From: Macrostomum hystrix
Taxonomy: Eukaryota; Animalia; Platyhelminthes
Assembly (NCBI GenBank): GCA_950097015.1
Contig: CATNEN010000001.1
Location: 1-64,000, forward strand
Direction: 5' to 3'
DNA length: 64,000 bases
The first letter of the stretch is position 1; each line of letters opens with the position of its first letter. The notes under the pieces were generated by a model. It saw nothing but the letters and a program-made list of their open reading frames with translations, was not told where the DNA came from and did no database searches. The position numbers and the translations under genes are program-made. Below are positions 33,612 to 64,000 of the stretch, in pieces.

Positions 33612-36600
33612 ATGAATTTTTTATTTCGTTGCGACCTCGATTTGTGGCTCGCCGACGCGACCAGTCTGCGCAATGACCTTCTTCGAGCCATAGACAGCAG
33701 CGACTCTGAGAAGCTGAGCAGAATATCAGACAGAATCAGAAAAGGACTTCAAGACGATGATGATGCAGAAGTGAAAGCGCTGCTGCTTCTGTCGGCCGCC
33801 GAGCCAGAGCTGGAACTGCTGCAGTTCTTGACTGAAATACATGCCGACTCATGCCTGCAGGTGCGAAGTTCATCAGCAAACAACATGCTGCACTTTGTGT
33901 GCGGATGCGACAACTCAGATTCAGCAACTGCAGCCTTGGAGCTGATCTATAACAAAGTGGGCAAACAGCTGGTCAATGAGGTCAACAACTCGAAGCAGCT
34001 GCCTGTACACATCGCAGCTAAAAACAGCAAGAATCCTGCAGTGTTTCTCTGGCTCATTTTCACCGTCGAGGACAAGAATTTGTTTTTCGTTCAAGACGAC
34101 GACGGCTACAGTGCTGTTAGCATAGCATTTTTTAATCAGAACTTGGACACACTCAAACAAGTGACTGAGAAGCTTGGTCTGGCGGAGTGCCTGGCGGCAA
34201 AAACTGCCAAAAATGAAAATATTTGCCTTCGAGCCGCATTCAATACAGCCAATCCTGCAGTGTTTCTCTGGCTCATTTCCATCGTCGAGGACAAGAATTT
34301 GTTTTTCGTTCAAGACGACGACGGCTACAGTGCTGTTAGCATAGCATTTTTTAAGCTGAACTTGGACACACTCAAACAAGTGACTGAGAAGCTTGGTCTG
34401 GCGGAGTGCCTGGCGGCAAAAACTGCCAAAAATAAAAATATTTGCCTTCGAGCCGCATTCAATACAGCCAATCCTGCAGTGTTTCTCTGGCTCATTTCCA
34501 CCGTCGAGGACAAGAATCTGTTTTTCGTTCAAGACGATGACGGCTACAGTGCTGTTAGCATAGCGTTTCTACATCAGAACTTGAACACACTCAAACAAGT
34601 GACTGAGAAGCTTGGTCTGGCGGAGTGCCTGGCGGCAAAAACTGCCAAAAATGAAAATATTTGCCTACGAGCCGCATTCAATACAGCCAATCCTGCAGTG
34701 TTTCTCTGGCTCATTTCCATCGTCGAGGACAAGAATCTGTTTTTCGTTCAAGACAATGACGGCTACAGTCCTGTTAGCATAGCATTTGAAAAGCAGAATT
34801 TGGACACTCTCAAACAAGTGACTGAGAAGCTTGGTCTGGCGGAGTGCCTGGCGGCGAAAACTGCCAAAAATAAAAATATTTGCCTTCGAGCCGCACTCAA
34901 TACAGCCAATCCTGCAGTGTTTCTCTGGCTCATTTCCATCGTCGAGGACAAGAATCTGTTTTTCGTTCAAGACGATGACGGCTACAGTGCTGTTAGCAGA
35001 GCATTTTATAAGCAGAACTTGGACACACTCAAACAAGTGACTGAGAAGCTTGGTCTGGCGGAGTGCCTGGCGGCAAAAACTGCCAAAAATAAAAATATTT
35101 GCCTTCTAGCCGCATTCAATACAGCCAATCCTGCAGTGTTTCTCTGGCTCATTTCCATCGTCGAGGACAAGAATCTGTTTTTCGTTCAAGACGATGACGG
35201 CTACAGTGCTGTTAGCACCGCATTTGAGAAGCAGAATTTGGACACTCTCAAACAAGTGACTGAGAAGCTTGGTCTGGCGGAGTGCCTGGCGGCGAAAACT
35301 GCCAAATATGAAAATATTTGCCTTCGAGCCGCATTCAATACAGCCAATCCTGCAGTGTTTCTCTGGCTCATTTCCATCGTCGAGGACAAGAATCTGTTTT
35401 TCGTTCAAGACAATGACGGCTACAGTGCTGTTAGCATCGCATTTGAGAAGCAGAATTTGGACACTCTTAAACAAGTGACTGAGAAGCTTGGTCTGGCGGA
35501 GTGCCTGGCGGCAAAAACGGCCAAAAATGAAAATATTTGCCTTCGAGCCGCATTCAATACAGCCAATCCTGCAGTGTTTCTCTGGCTCATTTCCACCGTC
35601 GAGGACAAGAATCTGTTTTTCGTTCAAGACAATGACGGCTACAGTCCTGTTAGCACCGCATTTGAGAAGCAGAATTTGGACACACTCAAACAAGTGACTG
35701 AGAAGCTTGGTCTGGCGGAGTGCCTGGCGGCAAAAACTGCCAAAAATCAAAATAGTTGCCTTCGAGCCGCATTCAATACAGACAATCCTGCAGTGTTTCT
35801 CTGGCTCATTTCCATCGTCGAGGACAAGAAACTCTTCTTTGAAAAGGATGATGATGGAGCTGCTGCTGTATCCTTTGCCTTTCATCGACAAGGGTTGGTC
35901 ACAGTGAAGCTTTTGACAGATCGTTTTGGACTCAGCGAGTGTTTGAGCTGCATTGACAATCTAAATCGGGATTTGTTTTATGATTCCATTCTGAACAGCG
36001 CGAACCCGGCAGTATTTCCCTGGCTTCTCGAGCAGGTCTCCCAGCAATGTCCAGACAAGAAGTCCAGAATTTTCGAGTTGGATTCCAACGGCAACACTCT
36101 GCTTCATGCACTGTATAGGAAGGTCGATTTGTTCGGCGATGTTGATGCGCTTGCAGTGCTGATCGGCCGCATCGACTTTCTTTTTGAAAATGAAGTTGAT
36201 CCAAGAAAAGAAAACAAATTCAGACTCAACTGTCTGCTTGCCGCTGAATCCAGTGCTGACAATCTCAATCGTCTTTTGCGAGCTCTTCAAAGATCAGAGC
36301 ATTTGGAAATCTTCAGAAATCTGCAAAGAAACTCGGAGGGCCTTCACGTAGCTCATGTCTTCTGCACTCGCTACGAGCTCCGAGTTATCGAGAACGGTTT
36401 GAGCAAGCTGTGCGGTCTCAGTCCTGACGAGATCCTTGCAGTCCGAGTTTCTGACGGACCGCTGAAGGATGCAACTTGTCTGCACTTTGCCTGCGAATCC
36501 GGTCACAAGCTGAACATCGAATACCTTCTGAAGAAAGGACGGAAGCTGGAAGATGAGACAGACGCCGGGCAGACGAGTGTCGACTTTGCCTGCAACAAGG

Positions 36601-38657
36601 CGAAGCTCGAGGATGTTTTGGATGTTGCAGAGAAGTCAGTTGGTCTCGGAAAACTGCTCAAGCTGGTTGATCCAACGAAGCGAGCTCTGAACCTTCCAGA
36701 CGTTCAGAGCGCCCGAGGTCACCTGACTCGATTCAACGACTCATCGCTCAAGGCCAGCATTGAGGATGATAAATCCAGACGACAGACGAGAGGCAAGGAA
36801 GCCGGTGAGATAAAAAACGAGAGTCTGCAGGCCGGACACGGAGCTGACAGCATTTCAAAGTCCGAGGATTCGCCAGAAGTGAAAATGCTGTTCAGAGCAT
36901 TCGAGCTCGACTCAAGTGAGATGCTCCGCAGCTTGATCAGTTTGGGCTTCGCCATCGATGAGATCGATGACCAGTTCTCCAGGCATGTCTCAAAGCAGAT
37001 TGGCAATGGGCGGGAAAGCAGTAAGTCTCCTACAATAGCCAAGCTTCAAAAGTACTTCTCGTCAGAAGAAAGAGATTCTGAAGCTCTCATGCTGATGGAG
37101 TACGCAGTGCTGCTCCAGAAGCCGAAGCTGCTCAATGACCTGATGCTTCTGCCACAGTTTGACATCATCCCACAGACTTTGAGGCTGCTCGTTTATCTCA
37201 AGCCCAGAGTGAAGTCGAGCAATGTTGAGAATCTGAAAAAAGTGCAAGCTCTAGCCTTGAACATTGTCGTCAATGTTCTGGAGCACCTCTACGTGAATGC
37301 TGATGAAGAAGAGCGGAATTTTTTTTTCGACTACCTGACTGGCTCATTTAAGGTGAAAGTGAAGGTGTCAGACGGGCATTCTCAGGTTCCAGGTCCGAGG
37401 TTCCCGCCACCATTGGATTATCTTACCAGACCAATTTCAAACGATAAAACTGATCACGAAAAAGTGAGCACAGATGCGAAGAAACCAAGAAAGACATCAG
37501 AAAAGAAGTCTGCAGCTGCAGTGATGTCAGTGATGGATCTGGTGCAGACCCTGGACTGTGACGATGTGTTTGCCACTGACTGCATCAGCCAGTTGGTGGA
37601 TCGGCAGTGGAACAAGGCTCCACCGTTGCCCTGGAGCAGTCCTGCACGCTGCTGCTCATGCAACATACCGCAAAAGGTGACAATTAAACAGCGGTTCTTC
37701 ATCCACTCTGTCTTTTTCCTGGTCTTTCTGCTCTACTTTGCCTGGTACGTGACGGATTTCAGTCGGACAAAGCAGTCTCCGATTCTAGACGTCGTCCTGT
37801 TGGCCTACGCGCTATCCTTCACTCTGCAGGAAGTCAACGACTTGCTGAACAAGCTGTCTATGAAGGACATACGAATTTTCAGAAGGCACTTGAGATGTCC
37901 TCGCTACTTCACCGATTTCTTCAACTACTTTGACATGCTCGGCCTGCTGCTGATGTGGGCGGGGCTGGTCCTGAAGCTGCTTGGCCGGCTGAGCGACCCC
38001 AGCCTCATGCGCAGCTCTCAGGTCGTCCTCAGCGTCTCGTTCCTGTTCCTGGGATTCCGCTCCGTGGCCCTGCTCAGCTACTTCAAGGTCACTGGGCCGA
38101 ACATCAATATGCTGAAGAGCTTGCTGTTTAAAGACCTGCTGCCATTCTTGATCATCATGCTGGTTCTGATCTTCTCATTTGGAATTTTCTTCTTCAACCT
38201 GCTGTTCCCGGCCTTCTCAGACCTGACAGACGTCCTGGCTCTCGTGAAGATTTTCACAACGCCCGTGTCGCTGGCCTTAAGCATCTTTGAGTTTTCGCTG
38301 TTCGAGTCGTGCAACTCCAGCAGTCTCGCGACCGGACAGACCTGTGCGGACAGTGGAGGCAACCAGGTGTACAGCCTATTCCTGATGTTCGTGTACGTCT
38401 TGCTGGTGAACATTGTGATGTTCAACCTGCTGATCGCACTGTTCAACCGCACCGTGACAGCGATGGCCAGCAGGGCGGAGGTTCTGTGGCGCAAGAATCG
38501 GTTCGAGCTGCTGGAGGAGTTCGCAGAGGTCAGTCCGGTTCCGCCGCCGCTGTCGTTCCCGCTCTACGCCTGGAAACTGCTGCGGAGGTGCCGCCCTTCG
38601 CACTGCCGACCCTGCGCTGGCAAAGTCGGTCCTTCTGACGGCTCTGAGAGAAGCAAG
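33612..38657 (+). CDS. Ankyrin-repeat TRP-family cation channel, paralog 1, large exon (ankyrin array + 6-TM channel + TRP box)
   Basis: 5-kb ORF with ankyrin motifs (QLPVHIAA, GNTLLHAL, ATCLHFAC, GQTSVDFAC), six hydrophobic helices, S3 YFTDFFNYFD, S4-S5 linker TGPNINMLKSLLFKD, S6 NLLIALFN, TRP box LWRKNRFELLEEF and PVPPPLS. It ends at the donor AAG|GTAAGA (38657/38658, phase 0). The 5' end is uncertain: first ATG 33612, or a splice acceptor CAG at 33662-33664. Confidence 0.93.
34032..36002 (+). repeat. Coding 219-bp tandem repeat (73 aa = two ankyrin-like repeats): 8 near-identical units plus 1 diverged unit
   Basis: AATCCTGCAGTG (NPAV) recurs at 34032, 34251, 34470, 34689, 34908, 35127, 35346, 35565 and 35784; a diverged NPAVFPWL recurs at 36003, keeping the exact period. 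Confidence 0.97.
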
Positions 38658-39062
38658 GTAAGAGGCCTGTTGGACTGAGGGACTGACTCTGTTACTCACA
38701 GATGATAAATGGTCTGAATATATAGCCATTGGATTCAGTCAGACAATGACCGAATCCAATTTTCAATTGCAAGAACTGATTGTGTGTACATGAATGCAAA
38801 TGGCTTTGTAGCAAAGACATGCTCAGATTATAGTAAGCTGGGGCTGGTCATGATACTCTTGAGGACTGATTAACAGTAGAAGCAAGGTGAGAGGCCTGGT
38901 GAGCACAGGTGAACTGAGGGGCTGACTATGTTTACTCATATAGGCACTAGATTCAGTCAGACGATGACCGAATCCAATTTGAATGGAAATCACTGGTTGT
39001 GTGCACATGTTTGCAAATAAGCTCATGTTTCAAGGCGCTCTTCCTCACGGCTTCCGTTCCAG
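38658..39062 (+). other. 405-bp GT-AG intron of paralog 1
   Basis: GTAAGA donor and TTCCAG acceptor; the reading frame is preserved across the join. Confidence 0.88.
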
Positions 39063-48150: not shown

Positions 48151-48249
48151 CTGGCGCCAATTTAAGAGCCGGAGTGGAGCATCGTTTCGCTCTTCATTTG
48201 CGACGGCAGCTTTCAAGCAGCCGACTGACCGACATCCACCGACCGAGTC

Positions 48250-50031: not shown

Positions 50032-50438
50032 GGCCCAATTTAGTCTCCAAATTTTGCACCTGAGCTAATTTTCCAATATTTCTTCGCGAATACATTAAAA
50101 GTCCATCTTCAAGACCTTACAGAAAGTCTAATCTTAGTATTTTAGAAAATTATTCTTGCAGATTGAAGCAGCCCCTCAACCTGTGTGCTCAAAGTGAGCA
50201 GTGTTTAATCTCTCATGTGGCATTGAAACTGTAGCGAATGGAAGCTGAGAATGGGTTGGACAAAGTACTTTTGTCACCGACTCAAACTCATCTCAAATGC
50301 TTTAGTAGGCCATGCAGACCTGTCTCCGTATGGACTCAGTGTTCATGTACTTTAATCAGCTCATAGGGTGTTTGAGTAGCACAAACTGGAGCACACAGTC
50401 GCAATGCAGTGTAGAATGTATGCTCAGCCCATGCTTCT

Positions 50439-50462
50439 GTTGCTAGGCAACAAATAAACAAA
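50439..50462. promoter_or_regulatory. Second candidate RFX X-box + forkhead site
   Basis: GTTGCTAGGCAAC at 50439-50451 and TAAACAAA at 50455-50462; further X-box-like copies at 50560 and 50580. Confidence 0.55.
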
Positions 50463-51695: not shown

Positions 51696-54190
51696 ACTTG
51701 CAGTAGTACTGTAGTGATATTGTACTTGCAGTAGTACTGTAGTGATATTATACTTGCAGTAGTACTGTAGTGATATCATACTTGCAGCTGTAGTGATATC
51801 ATACTTGCAGTAGTACTGTAGTGATATCATACTTGCAGTAGTACTGTAGTGATATCATACTTGCAGTAGTACTGTAGTGATATTATACTTGCAGTAGTAC
51901 TGTATTGATATTATACTTGCAGTAGTACTGTAGTGATATTATACTTGCAGTAGTACTGTAGTGATATTATACTTGCAGTAGTACTGTAGTGATATTATAC
52001 TTGCAGTAGTACTGTAGTGATATTGTACTTGCAGTAGTACTGTAGTGGTATCATACTTGCAGTAGTACTGTAGTGATATTATACTTGCAGTAGTACTGTA
52101 GTGATATCATACTTGCAGTAGTACTGTAGTGATATCATACTTGCAGTAGTACTGTAGTGATATTATACTTGCAGTAGTACTGTAGTGGTATCATACTTGC
52201 AGTAGTACTGTAGTGATATTATGCTTGCAGTAGTACTGTAGTGATATTGTACTTGCAGTAGTACTGTAGTGATATTATACTTGCAGTAGTACTGTAGTGG
52301 TATCATACTTGCAGTAGTACTGTAGTGATATTATACTTGCAGTAGTACTGTAGTGATATCATACTTGCAGTAGTACTGTAGTGATATTGTACTTGCAGTA
52401 GTACTGTAGTGATATTATGCTTGCAGTAGTACTGTAGTGATATTATACTTGCAGTAGTACTGTAGTGATGTTGTACTTGCAGTAGTACTGTAGTGATATT
52501 GTACTTGCAGTAGTACTGTAGTGATATTATGCTTGCAGTAGTACTGTAGTGATATTATACTTGCAGTAGTACTGTAGTGATGTTGTACTTGCAGTAGTAC
52601 TGTAGTGATATTGTACTTGCAGTAGTACTGTAGTGATATCATACTTGCAGTAGTACTGTAGTGATATTATACTTGCAGTAGTACTGTAGTGATATCATAC
52701 TTGCAGTAGTACTGTAGTGATATCATACTTGCAGTAGTACTGTAGTGATATCATACTTGCAGTAGTACTGTAGTGATATCATACTTGCAGTAGTACTGTA
52801 GTGATATTGTACTTGCAGTAGTACTGTAGTGATATCATACTTGCAGTAGTACTGTAGTGATATTATACTTGCAGTAGTACTGTAGTGATATCATACTTGC
52901 AGCAGTACTGTAGTGATATTTTACTTGCAGCAGTACTGTAGTGATATCATACTTGCAGTAGTACTGTAGTGATATTATACTTGCAGTAGTACTGTAGTGA
53001 TATCATACTTGCAGCAGTACTGTAGTGATGTTGTACTTGCAGTAGTACTGTAGTGATATTGTACTTGCAGTAGTACTGTAGTGATATCATACTTGCAGTA
53101 GTACTGTAGTGATATTATGCTTGCAGTAGTACTGTAGTGATATTATACTTGCAGTAGTACTGTAGTGATGTTGTACTTGCAGTAGTACTGTAGTGATATT
53201 GTACTTGCAGTAGTACTGTAGTGATATTATGCTTGCAGTAGTACTGTAGTGATATTATACTTGCAGTAGTACTGTAGTGATGTTGTACTTGCAGTAGTAC
53301 TGTAGTGATATTGTACTTGCAGTAGTACTGTAGTGATATCATACTTGCAGTAGTACTGTAGTGATATTATACTTGCAGTAGTACTGTAGTGATATCATAC
53401 TTGCAGTAGTACTGTAGTGATATCATACTTGCAGTAGTACTGTAGTGATATCATACTTGCAGTAGTACTGTAGTGATATCATACTTGCAGTAGTACTGTA
53501 GTGATATTGTACTTGCAGTAGTACTGTAGTGATATCATACTTGCAGTAGTACTGTAGTGATATTATACTTGCAGTAGTACTGTAGTGATATCATACTTGC
53601 AGCAGTACTGTAGTGATATTTTACTTGCAGCAGTACTGTAGTGATATCATACTTGCAGTAGTACTGTAGTGATATTATACTTGCAGTAGTACTGTAGTGA
53701 TATCATACTTGCAGCAGTACTGTAGTGATATTATACTTGCAGTAGTACTGTAGTGATATCATACTTGCAGCAGTACTGTAGTGATATTATACTTGCAGTA
53801 GTACTGTAGTGATATCATACTTGCAGTAGTACTGTAGTGATATTATACTTGCAGTAGTACTGTAGTGATATCATACTTGCAGCAGTACTGTAGTGATATC
53901 ATACTTGCAGCAGTACTGTAGTGATATCATACTTGCAGTAGTACTGTAGTGATATTGTACTTGCAGTAGTACTGTAGTGATATCATACTTGCAGTAGTAC
54001 TGTAGTGATATCATACTTGCAGTAGTACTGTAGTGATATCATACTTGCAGCAGTACTGTAGTGATATTATACTTGCAGTAGTACTGTAGTGATATCATAC
54101 TTGCAGCAGTACTGTAGTGATATTTTACTTGCAGCAGTACTGTAGTGATATCATACTTGCAGTAGTACTGTAGTGATAATTTGCTTGCAG
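51696..54190. repeat. 28-bp minisatellite (TACTTGCAGTAGTACTGTAGTGATATYA)
   Basis: About 89 copies; internal 700-bp duplication (identical track ORFs at 52415 and 53115). Confidence 0.97.
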
Positions 54191-54329
54191 CATTGCTGCA
54201 GTATGAAGGGATTATTGAGGCAAAAAGAGAGTAGAAAGAATATGTTGGCGTTTAATTAGATTTTTTTTTACATCATATTTTCTTATTCAGTTTCGGCAGC
54301 CTTCGAACTGCTCTCTCACTGACAGCCTC

Positions 54330-54420
54330 TGAGTCTCATCGTTGCTAGGCGAGTCTCACCGTTGCTAGGCGAGTCTCCCCCGTTGCCAGGGAAGTGTCTC
54401 CGTTGCTAGGCGAGTCTCAG
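54330..54420. promoter_or_regulatory. Cluster of four X-box-like motifs in about 20-bp tandem units
   Basis: GTTGCTAGGCGAG at 54341, 54361 and 54402; GTTGCCAGGGAAG at 54382; followed by a strong donor CG|GTGAGT at 54472. Confidence 0.45.
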
Positions 54421-54781
54421 CAAGTCGCTCACCACTGCTGTTGCAGCTGCGGCTGCATCGTGGACTCATCGGTGAGTGTTGTTGGCATTGTAGTTTGCAA
54501 TTGACTGAAAAAGTACAATTTGCATACTGGCGTTTGCTGACCCTGACCATAGACACCAATAGGAAATAAAGTGCGAATTTACTGATTGGACGGGTTCGAA
54601 GCTTCTTGCTGAAATTCGCTGGTGGAACTTTGTGATTCGAATATTGGCGATAAATCCTCGTTTGTGAGTAGCATTTTACAGGATATAATTTGCCTATTGA
54701 GAGGATAATTTGACAACTAAGGGGGGCATTTTTTAATTAATTGCGATAAGCTGCTAATTGAGAAGATATATTTGTTCATTA

Positions 54782-55919
54782 AGGGGATAACTTGGGGATT
54801 AAGGGAATCATTTTGGGATTTGTGGGGTTAATTTGTGGATTGAGGGGATAAATACAGGATTTAGGGGATAATCTGTGGATTGAGGGGATAATCTTTGGAT
54901 TGAGGGGATAATCTGTGGATTGAGGGTATATTCTTTGTATTGAGGGGATAATCTGTGCATTAAGGGGATAATCTGTGGATTGAGGGATAATCTGTGGATT
55001 GAGGGGATAATCTGTTGATTGAGGGGATACTCTGTGGATTGAGGGGATAATCTGTGGATTGAGGGATAATCTGTGGATTGAGGGGATAATCTGTGGATTG
55101 AGGGGATAATCTGTTGATTGAGGGGATACTCTGTGGATTGAGGGGATAATCTGTGGATTGAGGGTATAATCTGTGGATTTAGGTGATAATCTGTGGATTG
55201 AGGGGATAATCTGTGGATTGAGGGGATATTCTGTGGATTGAGGGGATAATCTGTGGATTGAGGGGATAATCTGTGGATTGAGGGGATAGTCTGTGGATTG
55301 AGGGGATAATCTATGGATTGAGGGGATAATCTGTGAATTGAGGGATAATCTGTGAATTGAGGGATAATCTGTGGATTGAGCGGATATTCTGTGGATTGAG
55401 GGGATATTCTGTGGATTGAGGGGATAATCTGTGGATTGAGCGGATATTCTGTGGATTGAGGGGATAATCTGTGGATTGATGGGATAATCTTTGGATTGAG
55501 GGGATAATCTGTGGATTGAGGGGATAATCTGTGGATTGAGGGGATAATCTGTGGATTGAGGGGATAATCTGTGGATTGAGGGGATAGTCTGTGGATTGAG
55601 GGGATAATCTGTGGATTGAGGGGATAATCTGTGGATTGAGGGGATATTCTGTGGATTGAGGGGATAATCTGTGGATTGAGCGGATATTCTGTGGATTGAG
55701 GGGATAATCTGTGGATTGAGGGGATAATCTGTGGATTGAGGGGATAATCTGTGGATTGAGGGGATAGTCTGTGGATTGAGGGGATAATCTGTGGATTGAG
55801 GGGATAATCTGTGGATTGAGGGGATAATCTGTGGATTGAGGGGATAATCTGTGGATTGAGGGGATAATCTGTGAATTGAGGGATAATCTGTGGATTGGGG
55901 GGATAATCTGTGGATTGAT
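54782..55919. repeat. 20-bp minisatellite (GAGGGGATAATCTGTGGATT)
   Basis: About 55 copies, degenerate at the 5' edge. Confidence 0.97.
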
Positions 55920-56160
55920 GTATTGTTCGCTAACTTAGTGGTACATTTTTTAATTAAGTGTGATAAAAACCCAAACAGAAAGGAGACATTTAAAATATAT
56001 TAGATGACAGGAATCAGTTGCAACTCAGGGTAGAGAGGGAAGAAGAGGAATAGAGAAGGGAATAAGGAGGGAATATGGGAGTCGAGACGGGTACCAGTCA
56101 AGACTATTCGATTCCAACTTATTTTCCACAGCAGGTAACTGACAACCAATGAGTGTCTCT

Positions 56161-56173
56161 GTTGCTAGGCAAC
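56161..56173. promoter_or_regulatory. Third exact candidate RFX X-box (GTTGCTAGGCAAC)
   Basis: Exact 13-mer about 2.2 kb upstream of the paralog 2 ATG. Confidence 0.5.
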
Positions 56174-56384
56174 TTTGCGTACTTGTAGTTGCTAACTTTG
56201 TCGATAGTAACCCTATTGGAGATAGTGTGCTCATTGACTGATTGAACGGGTCCTGAAGCTTCTTGCTGAAATGCGCTGGTGGAATTTCACTTTGTGTCTT
56301 AGTTTAGGCAAAAATTCTTCGTTTGGATGTACAGTTGCCGTCTGAGGCGAATATTTTGAGAACTGAGGAGACAATTCGTGCATT

Positions 56385-56560
56385 TAGGGGATAATTTGCG
56401 GATTTAGAGGATAATTCAAGGATTTGTGGGATAATGCGCGGATTTGGGGGGATAATGCGCAGATTTAGAGGATAATTCAAGGATTTGTGGGATAATGCGC
56501 GGATTTAGGGGATAATGCGCGGATTTGGGGGATAATTTGCGGATTTAAGGGATAATTTTA
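56385..56560. repeat. Short degenerate ~20-bp array (GGGGATAATGCGCGGATTTA), related to the 54782-55919 array
   Basis: About 8 copies sharing GGGATAAT...GGATT. Confidence 0.85.
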
Positions 56561-57199
56561 CGATTGAATGGGATAGAGGGGAAACTGTGTGGATTATTAG
56601 CAAAATATTGGGATTAAACTGCCGCTGATTTTACAGATTGCAAGATAAGTGGGATAAGCTGCAATGGACGGTGATTCTTAGAAACTGGGATGGCAAACAA
56701 TATTATTCTCAAGTTTTCCCTCTGTGCAGTGAGAGGCTGTTGCTAAAGTTGCAACTGTACATTTGCGACAGCAAGCCTAACAAGGTAGGAGTAACAAAAA
56801 CTAAAGTGCTTCACGCGGGAGGCAAAAATAGTTTATTTGTTCGTTTGCGAATACCAAAAACATTTCTGAAAGTCCATACCTACACATACCTAAAGAATGG
56901 ACAATTTTAAATTATTTTGGCAAGCGAGCCACCGTATAATAAACTACCGAATAACTGCAATGAATGGCCTTGGTTACAGGTTCTACTTTTCTTCCGCGTT
57001 TCTGTTTGGCAATAATCTTTCGCTATGCCGACACGCAAAGTCCTGGATTGATTTGTCTGTTGTAAAATTCAATACCTCAGCGATTAGGAAAACACGTTCG
57101 GCTAGTGTTCTTCATTTACACGATACTCACAAAAGAATTTCGAGAAATAAATAGATGGAGGGGAATAGTCATAGACAGAGGAATAGACGGAGGAATAGA

Positions 57200-57770
57200 C
57201 GGAGGAATATACAGGGGATTAGAGTGAGCAACTGAGAGGATGAGAGTGAGGAACTGAGAGGGATTAGAGTGAGCAACTGAGAGGATGAGAGTGAGGAACT
57301 GAGAGGGATGAGAGTGAGGAACTGAGAGGATGAGAGTGAGGAACTGAGAGGGATGAGAGTGAGGAACTGAGAGGGATGAGAGTGAGGAACTGAGAGGGAT
57401 GAGAGTGAGGAACTGAGAGGGATTAGAGTGAGCAACTGAGAGGATGAGAGTGAGGAACTGAGAGGGATGAGAGTGAGGAACTGAGAGGGATGAGAGTGAG
57501 GAACTGAGAGGGATTAGAGTGAGCAACTGAGAGGATGAGAGTGAGGAACTGAGAGGGATTAGATTGAGGAACTGAGAGGGATGAGAGTGAGGTACATAGA
57601 GGGGATGAGAGTGAGGAACTGAGAGGGATTAGATTGAGGAACTGAGAGGGATGAGAGTGAGGTACATAGAGGGGATGAGAGTGAGGAACAGAGAGGGATG
57701 AGAGTGAGGAACAGAGAGGGATGAGAGTGAGGAAGCGAGAGGACATTGGAGTGAGGAACAGAGAGGGTGA
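57200..57770. repeat. 23-bp minisatellite (GAGAGTGAGGAACTGAGAGGGAT), related to the 33-kb array
   Basis: About 25 copies; shares the GAGGAACTGAGAGGG core with the 1-33019 unit. Confidence 0.95.
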
Positions 57771-58385: not shown

Positions 58386-61300
58386 ATGGACACCAATGCT
58401 AGCGTCCGTGGACCGGAAGATGCCGGATCAGAGGACCGGGAACTCGAGGATGCAGAATCGCCGGTCTCTACGTGGGAAGACAGTGGATCAATGAGTCAGA
58501 GAAGTGAGGCGGACTCAACTTACTTTCTGCTAAGCTTCTTAGAGCCAGAGTTGCTAGTTTTCTTCTGGGACATCAATAAAAATAGTCTGCGCAATGACCT
58601 TCTTCGAGCCATAGACAGCAACGACTCTGAGGAGCTGAGCAGAATATCAGACAGAATAAGAAAAGGACTTCAAGACGATGAAGATGCAAAAGTGAAAGCG
58701 CTGCTGCTTCTGTCGGCCGCCAAGCCAGAGCTGAAACTGCTGCAGTTCTTGACTGAAAGACACGCCGACTCATGCCTGCAGGTGCGAAGTTCATCAGCTA
58801 ACAACATGCTGCACTTCGTGTGCGGATGCGACAACTCAGATTCAGCAACTGCAGCCTTGGAGCTGATCTATAACAAAGTGGGCAAACAGCTGGTCAAGGA
58901 GGTCAACAACTCGAAGCAGCTGCCTGTACACATCGCCGCATTCAATACAGCCAATCCTGCAGTGTTTCTCTGGCTCATTTCCACCGTCGAGGACAAGAAA
59001 CTGTTTTTCGTTCAAGACGATGACGGCTACAGTGCTGTTAGCATCGCATTTATGGAGCAGAACTTGGACACACTCAAACAAGTGACTGAGAAGCTTGGTC
59101 TGGCGGAGTGCCTGGCGGCAAAAACTGCCAAAAATGAAAATATTTGCCTTCGAGCCGCATTCAATTCAGCCAATCCTGCAGTGTTTCTCTGGCTCATTTC
59201 CACCGTCGAGGACAAGAAACTGTTTTTCGTTCAAGACGATGACGGCTACAGTGCTGTTAGCATCGCATTTATGGAGCAGAACTTGGACACACTCAAACAA
59301 GTGACTGAGAAGCTTGGTCTGGCGGAGTGCCTGGCGGCAAAAACTGCCAAAAATGAAAATATTTGCCTTCGAGCCGCATTCAATACAGCCAATCCTGCAG
59401 TGTTTCTCTGGCTCATTTCCACCGTCGAGGACAAGAATCTGTTTTTCGGTCACGATGATTACGGCTACAGTGCTGTTAGCCTCGCATTTGAGAAGCAGAA
59501 TTTGGACACACTCAAACAAGTGACTGAGAAGCTTGGTCTGGCGGAGTGCCTGGCGGCAAAAACTGCCAAAAATCTAAATATTTGCCTTCGAGCCGCAGCG
59601 AATTCAGCCAATCCTGCAGTGTTTCTCTGGCTCATTTCCACCGTCGAGGACAAGAATCTGTTTTTCGTTCAAGACGATGACGGCTACAGTGCTGTTAGCA
59701 CCGCCTTTGATGAGCTGAACTTGGACACACTCAAACAAGTGACTGAGAAGCTTGGTCTGGCGGAGTGCCTGGCGGCAAAAACTGCCAAAAATGAAAATAT
59801 TTGCAAAAGAGCCGCATTCAATACAGCCAATCCTGCAGTGTTTCTCTGGCTCATTTCTATCGTCGTGGACAAGAATCAGTTTTTCGTTCAAGACGATGAC
59901 GGCGAAAGTGCTGTTAGCATCGCATTTAATCTTCAGAACTTGGACACACTCAAACAAGTGACTGAGAAGCTTGGTCTGGCGGAGTGCCTGGCGGCAAAAA
60001 CTGCCAAAAATGAAAATATTTGCAAAAGAGCCGCATTCAATACAGCCAATCCTGCAGTGTTTCTCTGGCTCATTTCTATCGTCGTGGACAAGAATCAGTT
60101 TTTCGTTCAAGACGATGACGGCGAAAGTGCTGTTAGCATCGCATTTAATCTTCAGAACTTGGACACACTCAAACAAGTGACTGAGAAGCTTGGTCTGGCG
60201 GAGTGCCTGGCGGCAAAAACTGCCAAAAATCAAAATATTTGCCTTCTAGCCGCATTCAATACAGCCAATCCTGCAGTGTTTCTCTGGCTCATTTCCACCG
60301 TCGAGGACAAGAATCTGTTTTTCGGTCACGATGATTACGGCTACAGTGCTGTTAGCCTCGCATTTGAGAAGCAGAATTTGGACACACTCAAACAAGTGAC
60401 TGAGAAGCTTGGTCTGGCGGAGTGCCTGGCGGCAAAAACTGCCAAAAATCTAAATATTTGCCTTCGAGCCGCAGCGAATTCAGCCAATCCTGCAGTGTTT
60501 CTCTGGCTCATTTCCACCGTCGAGGACAAGAATCTGTTTTTCGTTCAAGACGATGACGGCTACAGTGCTGTTAGCACCGCCTTTGATGAGCTGAACTTGG
60601 ACACACTCAAACAAGTGACTGAGAAGCTTGGTCTGGCGGAGTGCCTGGCGGCAAAAACTGCCAAAAATGAAAATATTTGCAAAAGAGCCGCATTCAATAC
60701 AGCCAATCCTGCAGTGTTTCTCTGGCTCATTTCTATCGTCGTGGACAAGAATCAGTTTTTCGTTCAAGACGATGACGGCGAAAGTGCTGTTAGCATCGCA
60801 TTTAATCTTCAGAACTTGGACACACTCAAACAAGTGACTGAGAAGCTTGGTCTGGCGGAGTGCCTGGCGGCAAAAACTGCCAAAAATGAAAATATTTGCA
60901 AAAGAGCCGCATTCAATACAGCCAATCCTGCAGTGTTTCTCTGGCTCATTTCTATCGTCGTGGACAAGAATCAGTTTTTCGTTCAAGACGATGACGGCGA
61001 AAGTGCTGTTAGCATCGCATTTAATCTTCAGAACTTGGACACACTCAAACAAGTGACTGAGAAGCTTGGTCTGGCGGAGTGCCTGGCGGCAAAAACTGCC
61101 AAAAATGAAAATATTTGCCTTCTAGCCGCATTCAATACAGCCAATCCTGCAGTGTTTCTCTGGCTCATTTCCATCGTCGAGGACAAGAATCTGTTTTTCG
61201 GTCACGATGATGACGGCTACAGTGCTGTTAGCACTGCATTTTTTAAGCAGAATTTGGACACACTCAAACGAGTGACTGAGAAGCTTGGTCTGGCGGAGTG

Positions 61301-64000
61301 CCTGGCGGCAAAAACTGCCAAAAATCAAAATATTTGCCTTCGAGCCGCATTCAATTCAGCCAATCCTGCAGTGTTTCTCTGGCTCATTTCCACCGTCGAG
61401 GACAAGAATCTGTTTTTCGGTCACGATGATGACGGCGAAAGTGCTGTTAGCCTCGCATTTGAGAAGCAGAATTTGGACACACTCAAACAAGTGACTGAGA
61501 AGCTTGGTCTGGCGGAGTGCCTGGCGGCAAAAACTGCCAAAAATCAAAATATTTGCCTTCTAGCCGCATTCAATACAGCCAATCCTGCAGTGTTTCTCTG
61601 GCTCATTTCCATCGTCGAGGACAAGAATCTGTTTTTCGGTCACGATGATGACGGCTACAGTGCTGTTAGCACTGCATTTTTTAAGCAGAATTTGGACACA
61701 CTCAAACGAGTGACTGAGAAGCTTGGTCTGGCGGAGTGCCTGGCGGCAAAAACTGCCAAAAATCAAAATATTTGCCTTCGAGCCGCATTCAATTCAGCCA
61801 ATCCTGCAGTGTTTCTCTGGCTCATTTCCATCGTCGAGGACAAGAATCTGTTTTTCGGTCACGATGATGACGGCTACAGTGCTGTTAGCATCGCATTTAT
61901 GGAGCAGAACTTGGACACACTCAAACAAGTGACTGAGAAGCTTGGTCTGGCGGAGTGCCTGGCGGCAAAAACTGCCAAAAATGAAAATATTTGCCTTCGA
62001 GCCGCATTCAATACAGCCAATCCTGCAGTGTTTCTCTGGCTCATTTCCACCGTCGAGGACAAGAATCTGTTTTTCGGTCACGATGATGACGGCTACAGTG
62101 CTGTTAGCCTCGCATTTGAGAAGCAGAATTTGGACACACTCAAACAAGTGACTGAGAAGCTTGGTCTGGCGGAGTGCCTGGCGGCAAAAACTGCCAAAAA
62201 TCAAAATATTTGCCTTCTAGCCGCATTCAATACAGCCAATCCTGCAGTGTTTCTCTGGCTCATTTCCATCGTCGAGGACAAGAATCTGTTTTTCGGTCAC
62301 GATGATGACGGCTACAGTGCTGTTAGCACTGCATTTTTTAAGCAGAATTTGGACACACTCAAACGAGTGACTGAGAAGCTTGGTCTGGCGGAGTGCCTGG
62401 CGGCAAAAACTGCCAAAAATGAAAATATTTGCAAAAGAGCCGCATTCAATACAGCCAATCCTGCAGTGTTTCTCTGGCTCATTTCTATCGTCGTGGACAA
62501 GAATCAGTTTTTCGTTCAAGACGATGACGGCGAAAGTGCTGTTAGCATCGCATTTAATCTTCAGAATTTGGACACACTCAAACGAGTGACTGAGAAGCTT
62601 GGTCTGGCGGAGTGCCTGGCGGCAAAAACTGCCAAAAATCAAAATATTTGCCTTCGAGCCGCATTCAATTCAGCCAATCCTGCAGTGTTTCTCTGGCTCA
62701 TTTCCACCGTCGAGGACAAGAATCTGTTTTTCGGTCACGATGATGACGGCGAAAGTGCTGTTAGCCTCGCATTTGAGAAGCAGAATTTGGACACACTCAA
62801 ACAAGTGACTGAGAAGCTTGGTCTGGCGGAGTGCCTGGCGGCAAAAACTGCCAAAAATGAAAATATTTGCCTTCGAGCCGCATTCAATACAGCCAATCCT
62901 GCAGTGTTTCTCTGGCTCATTTCCACCGTCGAGGACAAGAATCTGTTTTTCGGTCACGATGATGACGGCTACAGTGCTGTTAGCCTCGCATTTGAGAAGC
63001 AGAATTTGGACACACTCAAACAAGTGACTGAGAAGCTTGGTCTGGCGGAGTGCCTGGCGGCAAAAACTGCCAAAAATCAAAATATTTGCCTTCTAGCCGC
63101 ATTCAATACAGCCAATCCTGCAGTGTTTCTCTGGCTCATTTCCATCGTCGAGGACAAGAATCTGTTTTTCGGTCACGATGATGACGGCTACAGTGCTGTT
63201 AGCACTGCATTTTTTAAGCAGAATTTGGACACACTCAAACGAGTGACTGAGAAGCTTGGTCTGGCGGAGTGCCTGGCGGCAAAAACTGCCAAAAATGAAA
63301 ATATTTGCAAAAGAGCCGCATTCAATACAGCCAATCCTGCAGTGTTTCTCTGGCTCATTTCTATCGTCGTGGACAAGAATCAGTTTTTCGTTCAAGACGA
63401 TGACGGCGAAAGTGCTGTTAGCATCGCATTTAATCTTCAGAATTTGGACACACTCAAACGAGTGACTGAGAAGCTTGGTCTGGCGGAGTGCCTGGCGGCA
63501 AAAACTGCCAAAAATCAAAATATTTGCCTTCGAGCCGCATTCAATTCAGCCAATCCTGCAGTGTTTCTCTGGCTCATTTCCACCGTCGAGGACAAGAATC
63601 TGTTTTTCGGTCACGATGATGACGGCGAAAGTGCTGTTAGCCTCGCATTTGAGAAGCAGAATTTGGACACACTCAAACAAGTGACTGAGAAGCTTGGTCT
63701 GGCGGAGTGCCTGGCGGCAAAAACTGCCAAAAATGAAAATATTTGCCTTCTAGCCGCATTCAATACAGCCAATCCTGCAGTGTTTCTCTGGCTCATTTCC
63801 ATCGTCGAGGACAAGAATCTGTTTTTCGGTCACGATGATGACGGCTACAGTGCTGTTAGCACTGCATTTTTTAAGCAGAATTTGGACACACTCAAACGAG
63901 TGACTGAGAAGCTTGGTCTGGCGGAGTGCCTGGCGGCAAAAACTGCCAAAAATCAAAATATTTGCCTTCGAGCCGCATTCAATTCAGCCAATCCTGCAGT
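58386..64000 (+). CDS. Ankyrin-repeat protein, tandem paralog 2 of the TRP channel gene (5' part; runs off the window)
   Basis: Manual translation: in-frame TAG at 58365, ATG at 58386 (MDTNASVRGPEDAGSEDRELEDAESPVSTWEDSGSMSQRSEADSTYFLLSFLEPELLVFFWDINKNSLRNDLLRAIDS...). From 58584 it is nearly identical to paralog 1 (from 33663). The frame is open to 64000. Candidate acceptor CTTCTCTTTCTTCAG ends at 58331. The channel domain is not visible in this window and is inferred from paralogy. Confidence 0.88.
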   Translation, partial: MDTNASVRGPEDAGSEDRELEDAESPVSTWEDSGSMSQRSEADSTYFLLSFLEPELLVFFWDINKNSLRNDLLRAIDSNDSEELSRISDRIRKGLQDDEDAKVKALLLLSAAKPELKLLQFLTERHADSCLQVRSSSANNMLHFVCGCDNSDSATAALELIYNKVGKQLVKEVNNSKQLPVHIAAFNTANPAVFLWLISTVEDKKLFFVQDDDGYSAVSIAFMEQNLDTLKQVTEKLGLAECLAAKTAKNENICLRAAFNSANPAVFLWLISTVEDKKLFFVQDDDGYSAVSIAFMEQNLDTLKQVTEKLGLAECLAAKTAKNENICLRAAFNTANPAVFLWLISTVEDKNLFFGHDDYGYSAVSLAFEKQNLDTLKQVTEKLGLAECLAAKTAKNLNICLRAAANSANPAVFLWLISTVEDKNLFFVQDDDGYSAVSTAFDELNLDTLKQVTEKLGLAECLAAKTAKNENICKRAAFNTANPAVFLWLISIVVDKNQFFVQDDDGESAVSIAFNLQNLDTLKQVTEKLGLAECLAAKTAKNENICKRAAFNTANPAVFLWLISIVVDKNQFFVQDDDGESAVSIAFNLQNLDTLKQVTEKLGLAECLAAKTAKNQNICLLAAFNTANPAVFLWLISTVEDKNLFFGHDDYGYSAVSLAFEKQNLDTLKQVTEKLGLAECLAAKTAKNLNICLRAAANSANPAVFLWLISTVEDKNLFFVQDDDGYSAVSTAFDELNLDTLKQVTEKLGLAECLAAKTAKNENICKRAAFNTANPAVFLWLISIVVDKNQFFVQDDDGESAVSIAFNLQNLDTLKQVTEKLGLAECLAAKTAKNENICKRAAFNTANPAVFLWLISIVVDKNQFFVQDDDGESAVSIAFNLQNLDTLKQVTEKLGLAECLAAKTAKNENICLLAAFNTANPAVFLWLISIVEDKNLFFGHDDDGYSAVSTAFFKQNLDTLKRVTEKLGLAECLAAKTAKNQNICLRAAFNSANPAVFLWLISTVEDKNLFFGHDDDGESAVSLAFEKQNLDTLKQVTEKLGLAECLAAKTAKNQNICLLAAFNTANPAVFLWLISIVEDKNLFFGHDDDGYSAVSTAFFKQNLDTLKRVTEKLGLAECLAAKTAKNQNICLRAAFNSANPAVFLWLISIVEDKNLFFGHDDDGYSAVSIAFMEQNLDTLKQVTEKLGLAECLAAKTAKNENICLRAAFNTANPAVFLWLISTVEDKNLFFGHDDDGYSAVSLAFEKQNLDTLKQVTEKLGLAECLAAKTAKNQNICLLAAFNTANPAVFLWLISIVEDKNLFFGHDDDGYSAVSTAFFKQNLDTLKRVTEKLGLAECLAAKTAKNENICKRAAFNTANPAVFLWLISIVVDKNQFFVQDDDGESAVSIAFNLQNLDTLKRVTEKLGLAECLAAKTAKNQNICLRAAFNSANPAVFLWLISTVEDKNLFFGHDDDGESAVSLAFEKQNLDTLKQVTEKLGLAECLAAKTAKNENICLRAAFNTANPAVFLWLISTVEDKNLFFGHDDDGYSAVSLAFEKQNLDTLKQVTEKLGLAECLAAKTAKNQNICLLAAFNTANPAVFLWLISIVEDKNLFFGHDDDGYSAVSTAFFKQNLDTLKRVTEKLGLAECLAAKTAKNENICKRAAFNTANPAVFLWLISIVVDKNQFFVQDDDGESAVSIAFNLQNLDTLKRVTEKLGLAECLAAKTAKNQNICLRAAFNSANPAVFLWLISTVEDKNLFFGHDDDGESAVSLAFEKQNLDTLKQVTEKLGLAECLAAKTAKNENICLLAAFNTANPAVFLWLISIVEDKNLFFGHDDDGYSAVSTAFFKQNLDTLKRVTEKLGLAECLAAKTAKNQNICLRAAFNSANPA
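58953..64000 (+). repeat. Coding 219-bp tandem repeat, 23 complete units plus the start of a 24th
   Basis: AATCCTGCAGT at 58953 and every 219 bp to 63990 ((63990-58953)/219 = 23); no indels or stops. Confidence 0.98.

What the first reader, a model, noticed from the sequence alone, without database searches (positions are those of the whole stretch)
58953..64000. Ankyrin array of a TRP-channel paralog is homogenised except at hypervariable ligand-face codons: a candidate diversifying receptor-channel system
Seen: the 73-aa units are almost invariant (NPAVFLWL; LK[Q/R]VTEKLGLAECLAAKTAK), but whole codons are swapped at a few sites. The di-residue in S-x-A-F-[XX]-Q reads ME,ME,EK,DE,NL,NL,EK,DE,NL,NL,FK,EK,FK,ME,EK,FK,NL,EK,EK,FK,NL,EK,FK in paralog 2 and FN,FK,LH,EK,YK,EK,EK,EK in paralog 1. 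Other variable sites across the two arrays are [VQ/GH]-D-[D/N]-[D/Y]-G-[Y/E], S-[I/R/T/L]-AF and N-[E/K/Q/L]-NIC-[L/K]-[R/L]-AA-[F/L/A]-N. Synonymous changes exist but are scattered single bases. Established: aligned to the ankyrin consensus DxxGxTPLHxAAxxG, these sites are the beta-turn and helix-1 positions on the concave binding face, largely the ones randomised in DARPin libraries. High internal conservation with variable surface residues is the signature of fungal NLR sensor repeats (HET-E-type WD40, ANK, TPR). Inference: the array is a rapidly re-coded recognition surface (non-self, pathogen or partner ligand) wired to an ion channel, unlike the divergent fixed-number ankyrins of TRPA1, TRPN, TRPV and TRPC.
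Basis: partly seen in the sequence, partly recalled or inferred. Interest (0 to 1): 0.92.

Follow-up and report, generated by a model that had tools for sequence, protein, structure and literature searches.

The report
Variable-groove ankyrin arrays on flatworm TRPM-like channels
A Macrostomum flatworm has about ten neighbouring ion-channel genes, each with a long cytoplasmic array of near-identical double-ankyrin units that differ almost only at residues lining the binding groove; this pattern is known from fungal immune sensors but not, to my knowledge, from an animal channel, and what the array binds is unknown.

Summary
Window 58941-64000 holds 23 in-frame 219-nt (73-aa) units of an open frame of 3199 codons that ends in a TRPM-like channel.

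- **Fold.** Each unit is a pair of ankyrin repeats (AlphaFold pLDDT 95; Foldseek and profile hits are all ANK). Pfam does not recognise the homogenised units.
- **Extent.** The genome has ten such genes with 2 to about 40 units each, 142 units in all, and no copies elsewhere. They probably form one locus that the assembly split.
- **Where the variation lies.** It is concentrated in 11 of 73 codons, at ANK positions 5, 9, 10, 13 and 14 on helix 1 plus the hairpins. This is the groove side by canonical ANK geometry.
- **Concerted evolution.** Units are 87% alike within this species. M. lignano orthologue units are 83-87% alike among themselves but only 67-68% alike to these, and they vary at the same positions.
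- **Selection.** M2a and M8 give omega about 5. The likelihood ratio of 241 exceeds 21 recombination-null replicates (0-73). With site-rate variation the ratio falls to 36, against 26 and 28 in two null replicates. Against local synonymous change, dN/dS is about 1.4.

Selection for groove diversity is likely but not proven. The array is cytoplasmic, and no evidence points to non-self or pathogen recognition. The scan noted this family before elsewhere in this genome (s1-332670).

The parts
58386..64000 (+). Paralog 2 coding sequence, from the ATG conserved among paralogs (MDTNAS...) to the window end. The open frame continues to C1:67964 (3199 codons) and ends in a TRPM-like channel.
   Evidence: The frame is open from 58368. 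The 3199-codon frame and the 96%-identical channel part lie at C1:66690-67964.
58587..58940 (+). N-terminal helical cap in front of the array, made of divergent ANK-like helix pairs.
   Evidence: AlphaFold model residues 1-118, block pLDDT 85-97. The profile aligns this part to ANK repeats of TRPA1.
58941..63977 (+). 23 complete 219-nt units, each encoding two ankyrin repeats of 37 and 36 residues. Unit 24 starts at 63978, and the array has 29 units in all.
59052..59057 (+). Example of the hypervariable di-residue (unit codons 38-39, ANK positions 13-14 of repeat B) in unit 1. The same codons recur every 219 nt.
   Evidence: 10 and 9 different residues occur at these two codons among 138 units. 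Posterior for omega>1 is 1.0 under M2a and M8.
59148..59162 (+). Example of the repeat-A variable stripe: unit codons 70 and 71 (ANK 9 and 10) and codon 1 of the next unit (ANK 13), on one helix that spans the unit boundary.
59379..61130 (+). Very recent four-unit block duplication (units 3-6 and 7-10).
   Evidence: 1 difference in 876 nt.
33612..38657 (+). Paralog 1, exon 1. It holds the cap, 8 homogenised units plus 1 diverged unit (34020-35990), further ANK repeats, a linker and the six-helix channel with TRP helix.
   Evidence: Open frame of 1713 codons. Pfam Ank_2 at aa 977-1023 and Ion_trans at aa 1392-1647. The best solved relatives are all TRPM.
38658..39061 (+). Intron of paralog 1 (GTAAG donor, ...TTCCAG acceptor). 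It is followed by an exon (about 39062-39470) encoding a coiled-coil-like tail.
   Evidence: Read from the sequence. M. lignano proteins continue colinearly into this exon (consensus). The exons were not joined for any search.

Best explanation
These are cytoplasmic N-terminal ankyrin solenoids of a recently expanded family of TRPM-like cation channels in a Macrostomum flatworm.

Shown. Each 73-aa unit is two ankyrin repeats. Unequal crossing-over and gene conversion keep all units of the locus nearly identical and change their number, from 2 to about 40 per gene. They also reshuffle sub-unit segments. The residues that stay different form an i, i+1, i+4, i+5 stripe on helix 1 of both repeats (ANK positions 9, 10, 13, 14), together with position 5 and the hairpin loops.

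Inferred. By canonical ankyrin geometry this stripe lines the concave binding groove. The most likely reason it stays diverse while everything else is homogenised is selection for different binding properties. Each gene would then present a different combinatorial groove to a cytoplasmic partner, such as an extended peptide, a scaffold or a cytoskeletal element, that tethers, localises or gates the channel. The partner and the physiological role are unknown.
For: - **ANK fold.** AlphaFold of the cap plus 4 units gives pLDDT 95.2 and pTM 0.89. Foldseek top hits are all ANK arrays: espin, AnkB, ankyrin-1, NOMPC, TRPA1 and DARPins, E down to 1e-10. The profile search hits TRPA1 ANK (1.5e-11), consensus ANK 1n0r and a DARPin, and its printed TRPA1 alignments fix the register. 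The units align gap-free at 53% identity to a paralog's array that Pfam calls ANK at 5e-31.
- **Channel.** S1-S6 plus the TRP helix align to TRPM3/2/1/4 at E 1e-16.
- **Family.** Ten genes have open frames of 1242-3199 codons, and all DNA copies of the unit lie in them.
- **Concerted evolution.** Units are 87% identical within this species and 83-87% within M. lignano P0004/P0006, but only 67-68% between the species.
- **Concentration of variation.** Amino-acid heterozygosity is 0.50 at 11 codons and 0.063 at the other 62. Nucleotide diversity is 0.246 at 0-fold sites of the variable codons, 0.056 at 4-fold sites and 0.019 at the other 0-fold sites.
- **Location.** Entropy is 0.81 on helix 1 and 0.135 on helix 2 (p 0.005). 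Eight of the 11 variable codons lie in helix 1 or its hairpin (Fisher p 0.031).
- **Same positions elsewhere.** Position 38 is the most variable position in M. lignano arrays and in two diverged paralogs. Per-position entropies correlate at rho 0.54 and 0.43.
- **Site models.** M2a vs M1a gives a likelihood ratio of 240.6 with omega 5.2 on 15% of sites. M8 vs M7 gives 269. Twenty-one null replicates with extreme recombination gave 0-73.
- **Shuffling.** Mutual information is high within site clusters and low between the two faces.
Against: - A model with gamma site rates and omega at most 1 fits better than M2a without site rates (-3288.8 vs -3349.7). Adding an omega>1 class then gains a likelihood ratio of only 35.9. 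Two null replicates with recombination gave 25.8 and 28.4.
- dN/dS at the variable codons against their own synonymous change is about 1.4.
- Nonsynonymous variants are not at higher frequency than synonymous ones.
- The non-repeat parts of the genes have omega 0.52, and one gene has a frame shift in its array. Some relaxation of constraint in the family is therefore plausible.
- Groove location rests on secondary structure, register and canonical ANK geometry, because the tools returned no coordinates.
- No partner, expression site or allelic data were obtained here.
Confidence: 0.55

Rival explanations
1. Relaxed constraint without selection for diversity. The arrays turn over quickly by unequal crossing-over. 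A few solvent-exposed helix-1 and loop positions are simply free to change (omega about 1), and their diversity looks high because they carry old or fast-changing unit lineages. The groove has no specific ligand.
For: - M1a with gamma rates fits better than M2a without them, and the remaining likelihood ratio of 35.9 is close to null replicates of 25.8 and 28.4.
- Local dN/dS is about 1.4.
- Frequency spectra of synonymous and nonsynonymous variants do not differ.
- Omega is 0.52 in the gene tails, and one array has a frame shift.
Against: - Neutral sites of a homogenised array should show the diversity of 4-fold sites (0.056). They would not reach the 0.42-0.65 measured at first and second positions of codons 30, 35, 38, 39, 66 and 70.
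- Codons differ at two or three bases while flanking codons are invariant.
- Helix 2 as a whole has very low entropy, and I take D43, K46, Q47, E50 and K51 on it to be exposed. If so, exposure alone does not explain which sites vary.
- The same positions vary in the independently homogenised M. lignano arrays.
Confidence: 0.25
2. Mechanical or tethering solenoid of the NOMPC type. The array would be a gating spring or tether, and the selected variable would be its length (number of units). The groove residues would adapt to a cytoskeletal anchor and would not form a repertoire of recognition surfaces.
For: - The full-length model's best structural match is NOMPC at E 5e-16.
- Unit number differs greatly between paralogs, from 2 to about 40, which is roughly 4-80 repeats.
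- The array is cytoplasmic and N-terminal, as in NOMPC and TRPA1.
Against: - A spring needs no groove diversity, yet 65 repeat-B and 35 repeat-A groove signatures occur among 138 units.
- From my own knowledge, NOMPC keeps a fixed 29 divergent repeats.
- The pore is TRPM-like, not TRPN-like.
Confidence: 0.12
3. Artefact or dead DNA. The array would be an assembly expansion of a collapsed repeat, or the genes would be decaying pseudogenes.
For: - Identical multi-unit blocks occur.
- One gene has a frame shift inside its array.
- Public short contigs cannot confirm unit order.
Against: - Nine of ten genes keep open frames of 1242-3199 codons through array and channel.
- Unit sequences occur in runs from two separate studies.
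- M. lignano has orthologous arrays in annotated proteins.
- Non-variable codons are under purifying selection, with omega about 0.35.
Confidence: 0.03

Closest known systems
Highly internally conserved ANK/TPR/WD sensor repeats of fungal NLRs (HET-E/NWD family; Dyrka et al. 2014, PMC4986451)
   Same: Both have tandem repeats about 85-90% identical to each other, variable repeat number, and concerted evolution with shuffling within and between family members. In both, the variable or positively selected sites lie on the inner helices and hairpin of the ANK concave face (compared).
   Different: There is no NACHT or NB-ARC domain. The host is an animal. The output module is a TRPM-like ion channel, not a cell-death effector. 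The unit is a double repeat of 73 aa. Allelic polymorphism and any role in non-self recognition were not tested.
TRP channels with N-terminal ankyrin arrays: NOMPC/TRPN (29 repeats) and TRPA1 (14-17 repeats)
   Same: Both have a cytoplasmic N-terminal ANK solenoid in front of a six-helix TRP pore. NOMPC is the best whole-chain structural match, and TRPA1 ANK is the best sequence-profile match of the array.
   Different: The pore and TRP helix are TRPM-like by sequence; all 60 PDB hits listed are TRPM. The repeats are near-identical instead of divergent, and their number varies from gene to gene.
TRPM channels (TRPM1-8)
   Same: S1-S6, the TRP helix with the WxxxRF...PPPL motif, and a coiled-coil-like tail on the next exon. 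The fold aligns to TRPM4/3/8 over 630-920 columns.
   Different: Pfam finds no melastatin or SLOG (LSDAT) N-terminal domain. An ANK array takes its place. A 2026 survey of TRPM domain gains and losses contains no occurrence of 'flatworm', 'Platyhelminthes' or 'Macrostomum' and mentions ankyrin only for MHR3/4 and other TRP families (PMC13143021).
DARPin libraries (designed ANK binders)
   Same: A constant ANK framework with diversity at positions 5, 13 and 14, and to a lesser degree at 2, 3 and the position-33 equivalent. This holds in the register fixed by the TRPA1 ANK alignments printed. The list of library positions is from my own knowledge of Binz et al. 2003.
   Different: Positions 9, 10 and 15 vary as well, and the canonical TPLH histidine is lost. 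The unit is two non-identical repeats, each a few residues longer than the canonical 33 and each ending in an extra short helix.
TALE repeats with a repeat-variable di-residue
   Same: Near-identical tandem units in which a di-residue, here codons 38-39, takes a limited alphabet. EK, FK, DQ, YQ, NL, FN, LH and LY make up 81% of units.
   Different: The fold is unrelated, there is no evidence of nucleic-acid binding, and several further positions vary. This is an analogy only.

Membership tests
Ankyrin repeat superfamily | Sequence match to ANK profiles | tested here: met
   Pfam ANK models do not match the homogenised units, even at E up to 10. They match the homologous arrays of paralogs L022 (Ank_2, 5e-31) and L023 (1.8e-21), to which the units align gap-free at 53% identity, E 7e-73. 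A profile of the arrays hits ANK domains in the PDB down to 1.5e-11.
Ankyrin repeat superfamily | Helix-turn-helix plus hairpin repeats stacked into a solenoid | tested here: met
   AlphaFold pLDDT 95.2, with two helix pairs and a hairpin bridge per unit. The Foldseek matches listed are ANK arrays: TM 0.6-0.74, E 1e-10, probability 1.0.
Ankyrin repeat superfamily | Conserved TPLH motif | tested here: not met
   The histidine position (ANK 9) is S/T/F in repeat B and L/K/F/H in repeat A. It is kept in paralogs L022 and L023 and in most M. lignano arrays. The homogenised units are therefore a derived, atypical ANK.
TRPM channels | Six-helix pore domain and TRP helix of TRPM type | tested here: met
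   phmmer against the PDB: all 60 listed hits are TRPM, best 1.5e-16, aligned through S1-S6 and the TRP helix. Pfam Ion_trans scores 3e-7.
TRPM channels | N-terminal melastatin homology region with SLOG/LSDAT domain | tested here: not met
   There is no LSDAT or other melastatin Pfam hit on the 1713-codon frame. The N-terminus is an ANK array. Whether the 500-aa linker is MHR3/4-like was not resolved; Foldseek alignments to TRPM extend over 630-920 columns.
TRPM channels | C-terminal coiled coil | tested here: inconclusive
   The next exon (39062-39470) gives only weak coiled-coil-type Pfam hits. It is colinear with M. lignano proteins. The joined protein was not built.
TRPN/NOMPC | TRPN-type pore with 29 divergent ANK repeats | tested here: not met
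   Whole-chain fold match to NOMPC at E 5e-16, but pore sequence relatives are TRPM only. Repeat number is variable and the repeats are near-identical.
Fungal-type NLR with highly conserved sensor repeats | NACHT or NB-ARC nucleotide-binding domain | tested here: not met
   No such Pfam domain in the whole frame.
Fungal-type NLR with highly conserved sensor repeats | High internal repeat conservation with concerted evolution and repeat-number variation | tested here: met
   87% identity among 138 units; 2 to about 40 units per gene; within-species identity 83-87% against 67-68% between species. Variation between alleles was not tested.
Fungal-type NLR with highly conserved sensor repeats | Positive diversifying selection on concave-face positions | tested here: inconclusive
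   M2a and M8 are positive and beyond a recombination null. The result is not robust once site rates vary. Local dN/dS is 1.4. The variable positions lie on helix 1 and the hairpins.

The most novel reading that the evidence does not exclude
The arrays form a combinatorial intracellular recognition system. Each double-ankyrin unit would read a short stretch of an extended cytoplasmic ligand through its variable groove stripe, in the way TALE or designed repeat binders read a polymer unit by unit. Unit shuffling would create new specificities, and binding would gate or position a TRPM-like channel. This would be an animal variable-repeat receptor whose output is an ion current, evolving under conflict such as infection or the intense sexual conflict of these hermaphrodites.
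Probability: 0.15. Interest if true: 0.9.

Novelty: new variant of a known kind. Interest (0 to 1): 0.66.

Why it matters
Repeat arrays that are kept uniform while their binding-face residues are kept different are the hallmark of fast-adapting recognition proteins, best documented in fungal NLRs. Finding the same design on the cytoplasmic arm of an animal TRP channel, in ten neighbouring genes and in a second Macrostomum species, would link variable-repeat recognition directly to an ionic output. It would also give TRP biology a natural series in which ankyrin number (about 4 to 80 repeats) and groove identity vary on an almost constant pore. M. lignano is a laboratory model with, to my knowledge, RNAi and transgenesis, so the idea can be tested. 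If the variation turns out to be neutral, the locus is still a clean animal example of concerted evolution in a protein-coding repeat.

Tried and rejected
- **Pfam on the units.** No ANK hit even at E 10. The DUF hits are repeat artefacts with no significant stretch.
- **Subtelomeric location.** Rejected. There are no TTAGGG runs, and the same 23-bp satellite in the same orientation ends contig C5 and starts contig C1. The two clusters are probably one locus broken by the assembly.
- **Frequency-spectrum test.** Nonsynonymous and synonymous variants show no difference (p 0.78).
- **Count of high-diversity sites.** By my count from the table, 0-fold and 4-fold sites have the same share with diversity above 0.3 (13 of 142 against 3 of 33). 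The test has too few 4-fold sites to be useful.
- **Hitch-hiking.** Synonymous heterozygosity does not fall significantly with distance from variable codons (rho -0.21, p 0.11).
- **Codon-phase test.** Runs of variable bases give only weak support: 4 of 5 runs start at codon position 1 (p 0.045), ends show no pattern, and triplet variance is highest in frame.
- **Chi-square p-values of the site models.** Discarded, because recombination-null replicates alone give likelihood ratios up to 73.
- **Read support.** All served runs are short Logan contigs, so unit order, depth, allelic variation and expression could not be judged. The library kind of the 2020 study is unknown.
- **Three-dimensional mapping.** Variable residues could not be mapped by coordinates because structure prediction returns none.
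- **Joined protein.** The spliced two-exon protein of paralog 1 was not joined or searched.
Full report
**What is in the window.** Tandem Repeats Finder reports a 219-nt array from 58935 to the window end: 23.1 copies, 93% matches, no indels. One frame, opening at 58368, has no stop to the window end; the other two have 43 and 123 stops. Cutting at the NPAVF anchor gives 23 units spaced exactly 73 aa apart.

**The genes.** Paralog 1 is an open frame of 1713 codons (33537-38675). It carries Pfam ANK hits downstream of the array and an Ion_trans domain. Against the PDB, all 60 hits listed for its last 625 residues are TRPM channels, best 1.5e-16. The alignment covers S1-S6 and the TRP helix. A GTAAG donor at 38658 and an acceptor near 39061 lead into an exon that encodes a coiled-coil-like tail. 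That exon is colinear with Macrostomum lignano proteins.

The best database relatives are M. lignano proteins at 66-67% identity. TRPM4 follows far behind. The genome, 220 Mb in 42 contigs, is therefore from another Macrostomum species.

**The family.** A search of the whole genome found ten close paralogs, 94-97% identical in the channel part, with open frames of 1242-3199 codons. Paralog 2 is the 3199-codon frame ending at C1:67964. Five genes lie at C1:33-160 kb and five at C5:5.96-6.07 Mb, all on the + strand.

The last 10 kb of C5 carry the same G-rich 23-bp satellite, in the same orientation, as the first 32 kb of the window. Neither end has telomere repeats. The two clusters are probably one locus that the assembly broke inside the satellite. 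All DNA copies of the unit in the genome lie in these ten genes.

**The units are double ankyrin repeats.**
- Pfam does not recognise the homogenised units, even at E 10.
- The units align gap-free at 53% identity (E 7e-73) to the array of a 72%-identical paralog on C38. Pfam calls that array ANK at 5e-31. A 60%-identical paralog scores 1.8e-21.
- AlphaFold of the cap plus four units gives pLDDT 95.2 and pTM 0.89.
- The Foldseek matches listed are ANK arrays: espin, AnkB, ankyrin-1, NOMPC, TRPA1 and DARPins.
- A profile of the arrays hits TRPA1 ANK (1.5e-11), consensus ANK 1n0r and a DARPin. Its printed TRPA1 alignments fix the register.

In that register, unit residues D26-Q40 are ANK positions 1-15 of repeat B. 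T62-A73 plus F1-T3 of the next unit are positions 1-15 of repeat A. In the model, helix 1 of B is unit residues 32-39 and helix 2 of B is 42-52. Helix 1 of A is 68 to 1, and helix 2 of A is 6-15.

A full-length model of the shortest paralog is of moderate quality (pLDDT 74.7). It matches NOMPC best as a whole chain, then ANK proteins, TRPA1 and TRPM4/3/8. The architecture is thus NOMPC-like, with a TRPM-like pore and no melastatin domain.

**Where the variation lies.** I extracted 142 units from the ten genes and kept 138, of which 115 are distinct at the nucleotide level.
- Forty-five of the 73 positions have entropy below 0.2 bit.
- The most variable positions are 38 (10 residues), 35 and 39 (9 each), followed by 66, 30, 70, 71 and 1.
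- In ANK numbering these are positions 5, 9, 10 and 13 of repeat A and 5, 10, 13 and 14 of repeat B. Positions 2, 3, 9 and 15 and the preceding loop are moderately variable.
- On each helix 1 the variable residues follow an i, i+1, i+4, i+5 pattern, which is one face of the helix. The two alanine-type positions between them are invariant.
- Mean entropy is 0.81 on helix 1 and 0.135 on helix 2 (p 0.005). Eight of the 11 most variable codons fall in helix 1 or its hairpin (Fisher p 0.031).

By canonical ANK geometry this is the concave groove. I could not check it on coordinates because the tool returns none. Positions 5, 13 and 14 are DARPin library positions; 9, 10 and 15 are not.

Codons differ by two or three bases with no intermediates, for example TTC/GCG, CTT/AAA and GAG/TTT, next to invariant codons.

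**Homogenisation is real.**
- Units are 86-91% identical within a gene and 87% identical overall.
- Units of the closest M. lignano proteins (P0004, P0006) are 83-87% identical to each other but only 67-68% identical to this species' units. Each species has its own substitutions shared by all its units.
- This is the signature of concerted evolution or of independent re-expansion.
- The M. lignano units again differ from each other at positions 1, 24-30, 38-39, 43 and 66.
- In less homogenised arrays, position 38 is the most variable of all. Per-position entropies correlate with those found here at rho 0.54 and 0.43.

Within paralog 2 the array is built from about five unit types in recently duplicated blocks. 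Units 3-6 and 7-10 differ by one base in 876. Across the family there are 20 di-residues, 65 repeat-B groove signatures and 35 repeat-A groove signatures. Linkage is strong inside site clusters and weak between them, which indicates shuffling inside units.

**Is it selection?** Evidence for:
- Nucleotide diversity is 0.056-0.062 at 4-fold sites. It is 0.246 at 0-fold sites of the 17 most variable codons and 0.019 at the other 0-fold sites.
- I wrote a codon-likelihood script that uses a fixed IQ-TREE topology. M2a beats M1a by a likelihood ratio of 240.6, with omega 5.2 on 15% of sites. M8 beats M7 by 269, with omega 4.8. Both flag codons 1, 3, 21, 30, 35, 38, 39, 66, 70 and 71; M8 also flags 15.
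- Recombination invalidates the chi-square p-values. I therefore simulated the M1a fit with tips permuted independently per 6- or 2-codon block. Twenty-one replicates gave likelihood ratios of 0-73, all below the observed value.

Evidence against:
- On a minimum spanning tree of units, dN/dS at the 11 codons is 3.0-3.7 against the array-wide synonymous rate but only 1.41 against their own. Pairwise values tell the same story: pN 0.335, own pS 0.217, other codons' pS 0.085.
- M1a with gamma site rates (-3288.8) fits better than M2a without them (-3349.7). Adding an omega>1 class then gains only 35.9, with omega 3.1. Two null replicates with rate variation and recombination gave 25.8 and 28.4.
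- Frequency spectra of synonymous and nonsynonymous variants do not differ.

Part of the local synonymous excess is an artefact. Third-base changes that are needed for a codon swap are counted as synonymous steps. True within-amino-acid synonymous heterozygosity is 0.106 at the variable codons and 0.053 elsewhere. Amino-acid heterozygosity is 0.50 against 0.063.

My reading is that selection maintaining groove diversity is the most economical explanation. In a homogenised array, neutral sites should not exceed 4-fold diversity. Helix 2 as a whole has very low entropy, and I take several of its charged residues to be exposed. The same positions also vary in a second species. Even so, the formal case for omega above 1 is not closed.

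**State of the genes.** The non-repeat tails of the ten genes differ by dS 0.037 and dN 0.019, so omega is 0.52. Nine genes are intact. The gene at C1:127-139 kb has about 40 units but a frame shift inside the array.

**Independent data.** Public runs of the same organism from two studies hold about 45-48% of the sampled words. Their short contigs match unit sequences at 97% or better. They are contigs only, so unit order, alleles and expression cannot be read from them. An earlier follow-up in this scan on another piece of this genome (s1-332670) called a sister gene expressed. I did not test that.

**Comparison with known systems.** The evolutionary design matches the highly internally conserved ANK, TPR and WD sensor repeats of fungal NLRs. 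For those, repeat-number polymorphism, concerted evolution and positive selection on the ANK inner helices and hairpin are published (PMC4986451). There is no NOD domain here, so this is a functional analogy and not family membership.

Among TRP channels, NOMPC and TRPA1 share the N-terminal ANK solenoid but have divergent repeats in fixed number. TRPM channels share the pore but have a melastatin N-terminus. A 2026 survey of TRPM domain evolution contains no occurrence of 'flatworm', 'Platyhelminthes' or 'Macrostomum' and mentions ankyrin only for MHR3/4 and other TRP families (PMC13143021). Text searches found no report of hypervariable or homogenised ANK arrays on a TRP channel.

The N-terminus of a six-helix TRP channel is cytoplasmic. 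Any ligand must therefore be intracellular, and nothing here points to non-self or pathogen recognition.

**Verdict.** I class this as a new variant of known kinds and find it interesting mainly because it can be tested in a laboratory flatworm.

Noticed in passing
window 1-32300; L024 (C5:6111418-6121417): A single G-rich 23/24-bp satellite (GGGGATCAGGGAGAGGAACTGAGAG, GC skew +0.72) fills the first 32 kb of the window. It also fills the last 10 kb of contig C5 in the same orientation, and neither end has telomere repeats. C5 and C1 are probably adjacent, with the assembly broken in the satellite.
   Followed up: partly
window 40258-57767: The roughly 20 kb between the two channel genes is filled by at least seven different minisatellite arrays (periods 24, 32, 21, 22, 28, 20 and 23 bp, up to 113 copies each).
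   Followed up: no
window 48249-48335, 50553-50599, 54331-54419; L026 end: A 20-bp motif (CTCTCCGTTGCTAGGCGAG) recurs in short arrays between the minisatellites and again downstream of the last gene of the C5 cluster. Its meaning is unknown.
   Followed up: no
G000:C1:127205-138671 (L025/L015): The largest gene of the family has about 40 units, but the reading frame shifts inside the array near 129.35 kb. This is either a pseudogene or a one-base assembly error.
   Followed up: partly
window 38658-39470: Paralog 1 has a roughly 400-nt intron after the TRP-helix region. The next exon encodes a glutamine- and charge-rich coiled-coil-like tail that is colinear with M. lignano proteins.
   Followed up: partly
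whole genome: The genome holds more than 70 matches to the TRPM-like pore. Many lie in long intron-free open frames (up to 1681 codons) with ordinary, diverged ANK arrays (C38:14.32 Mb, C5:4.76 Mb, C1:21.6 Mb and others). This looks like a large lineage-specific expansion of ANK-TRPM-like channels.
   Followed up: partly
units, all ten genes: The nucleotide substitution pattern among units shows no excess of transitions (kappa about 1 in all codon fits; GTR rates A-G 0.86, C-T 1.47). This is unusual for neutral change.
   Followed up: no
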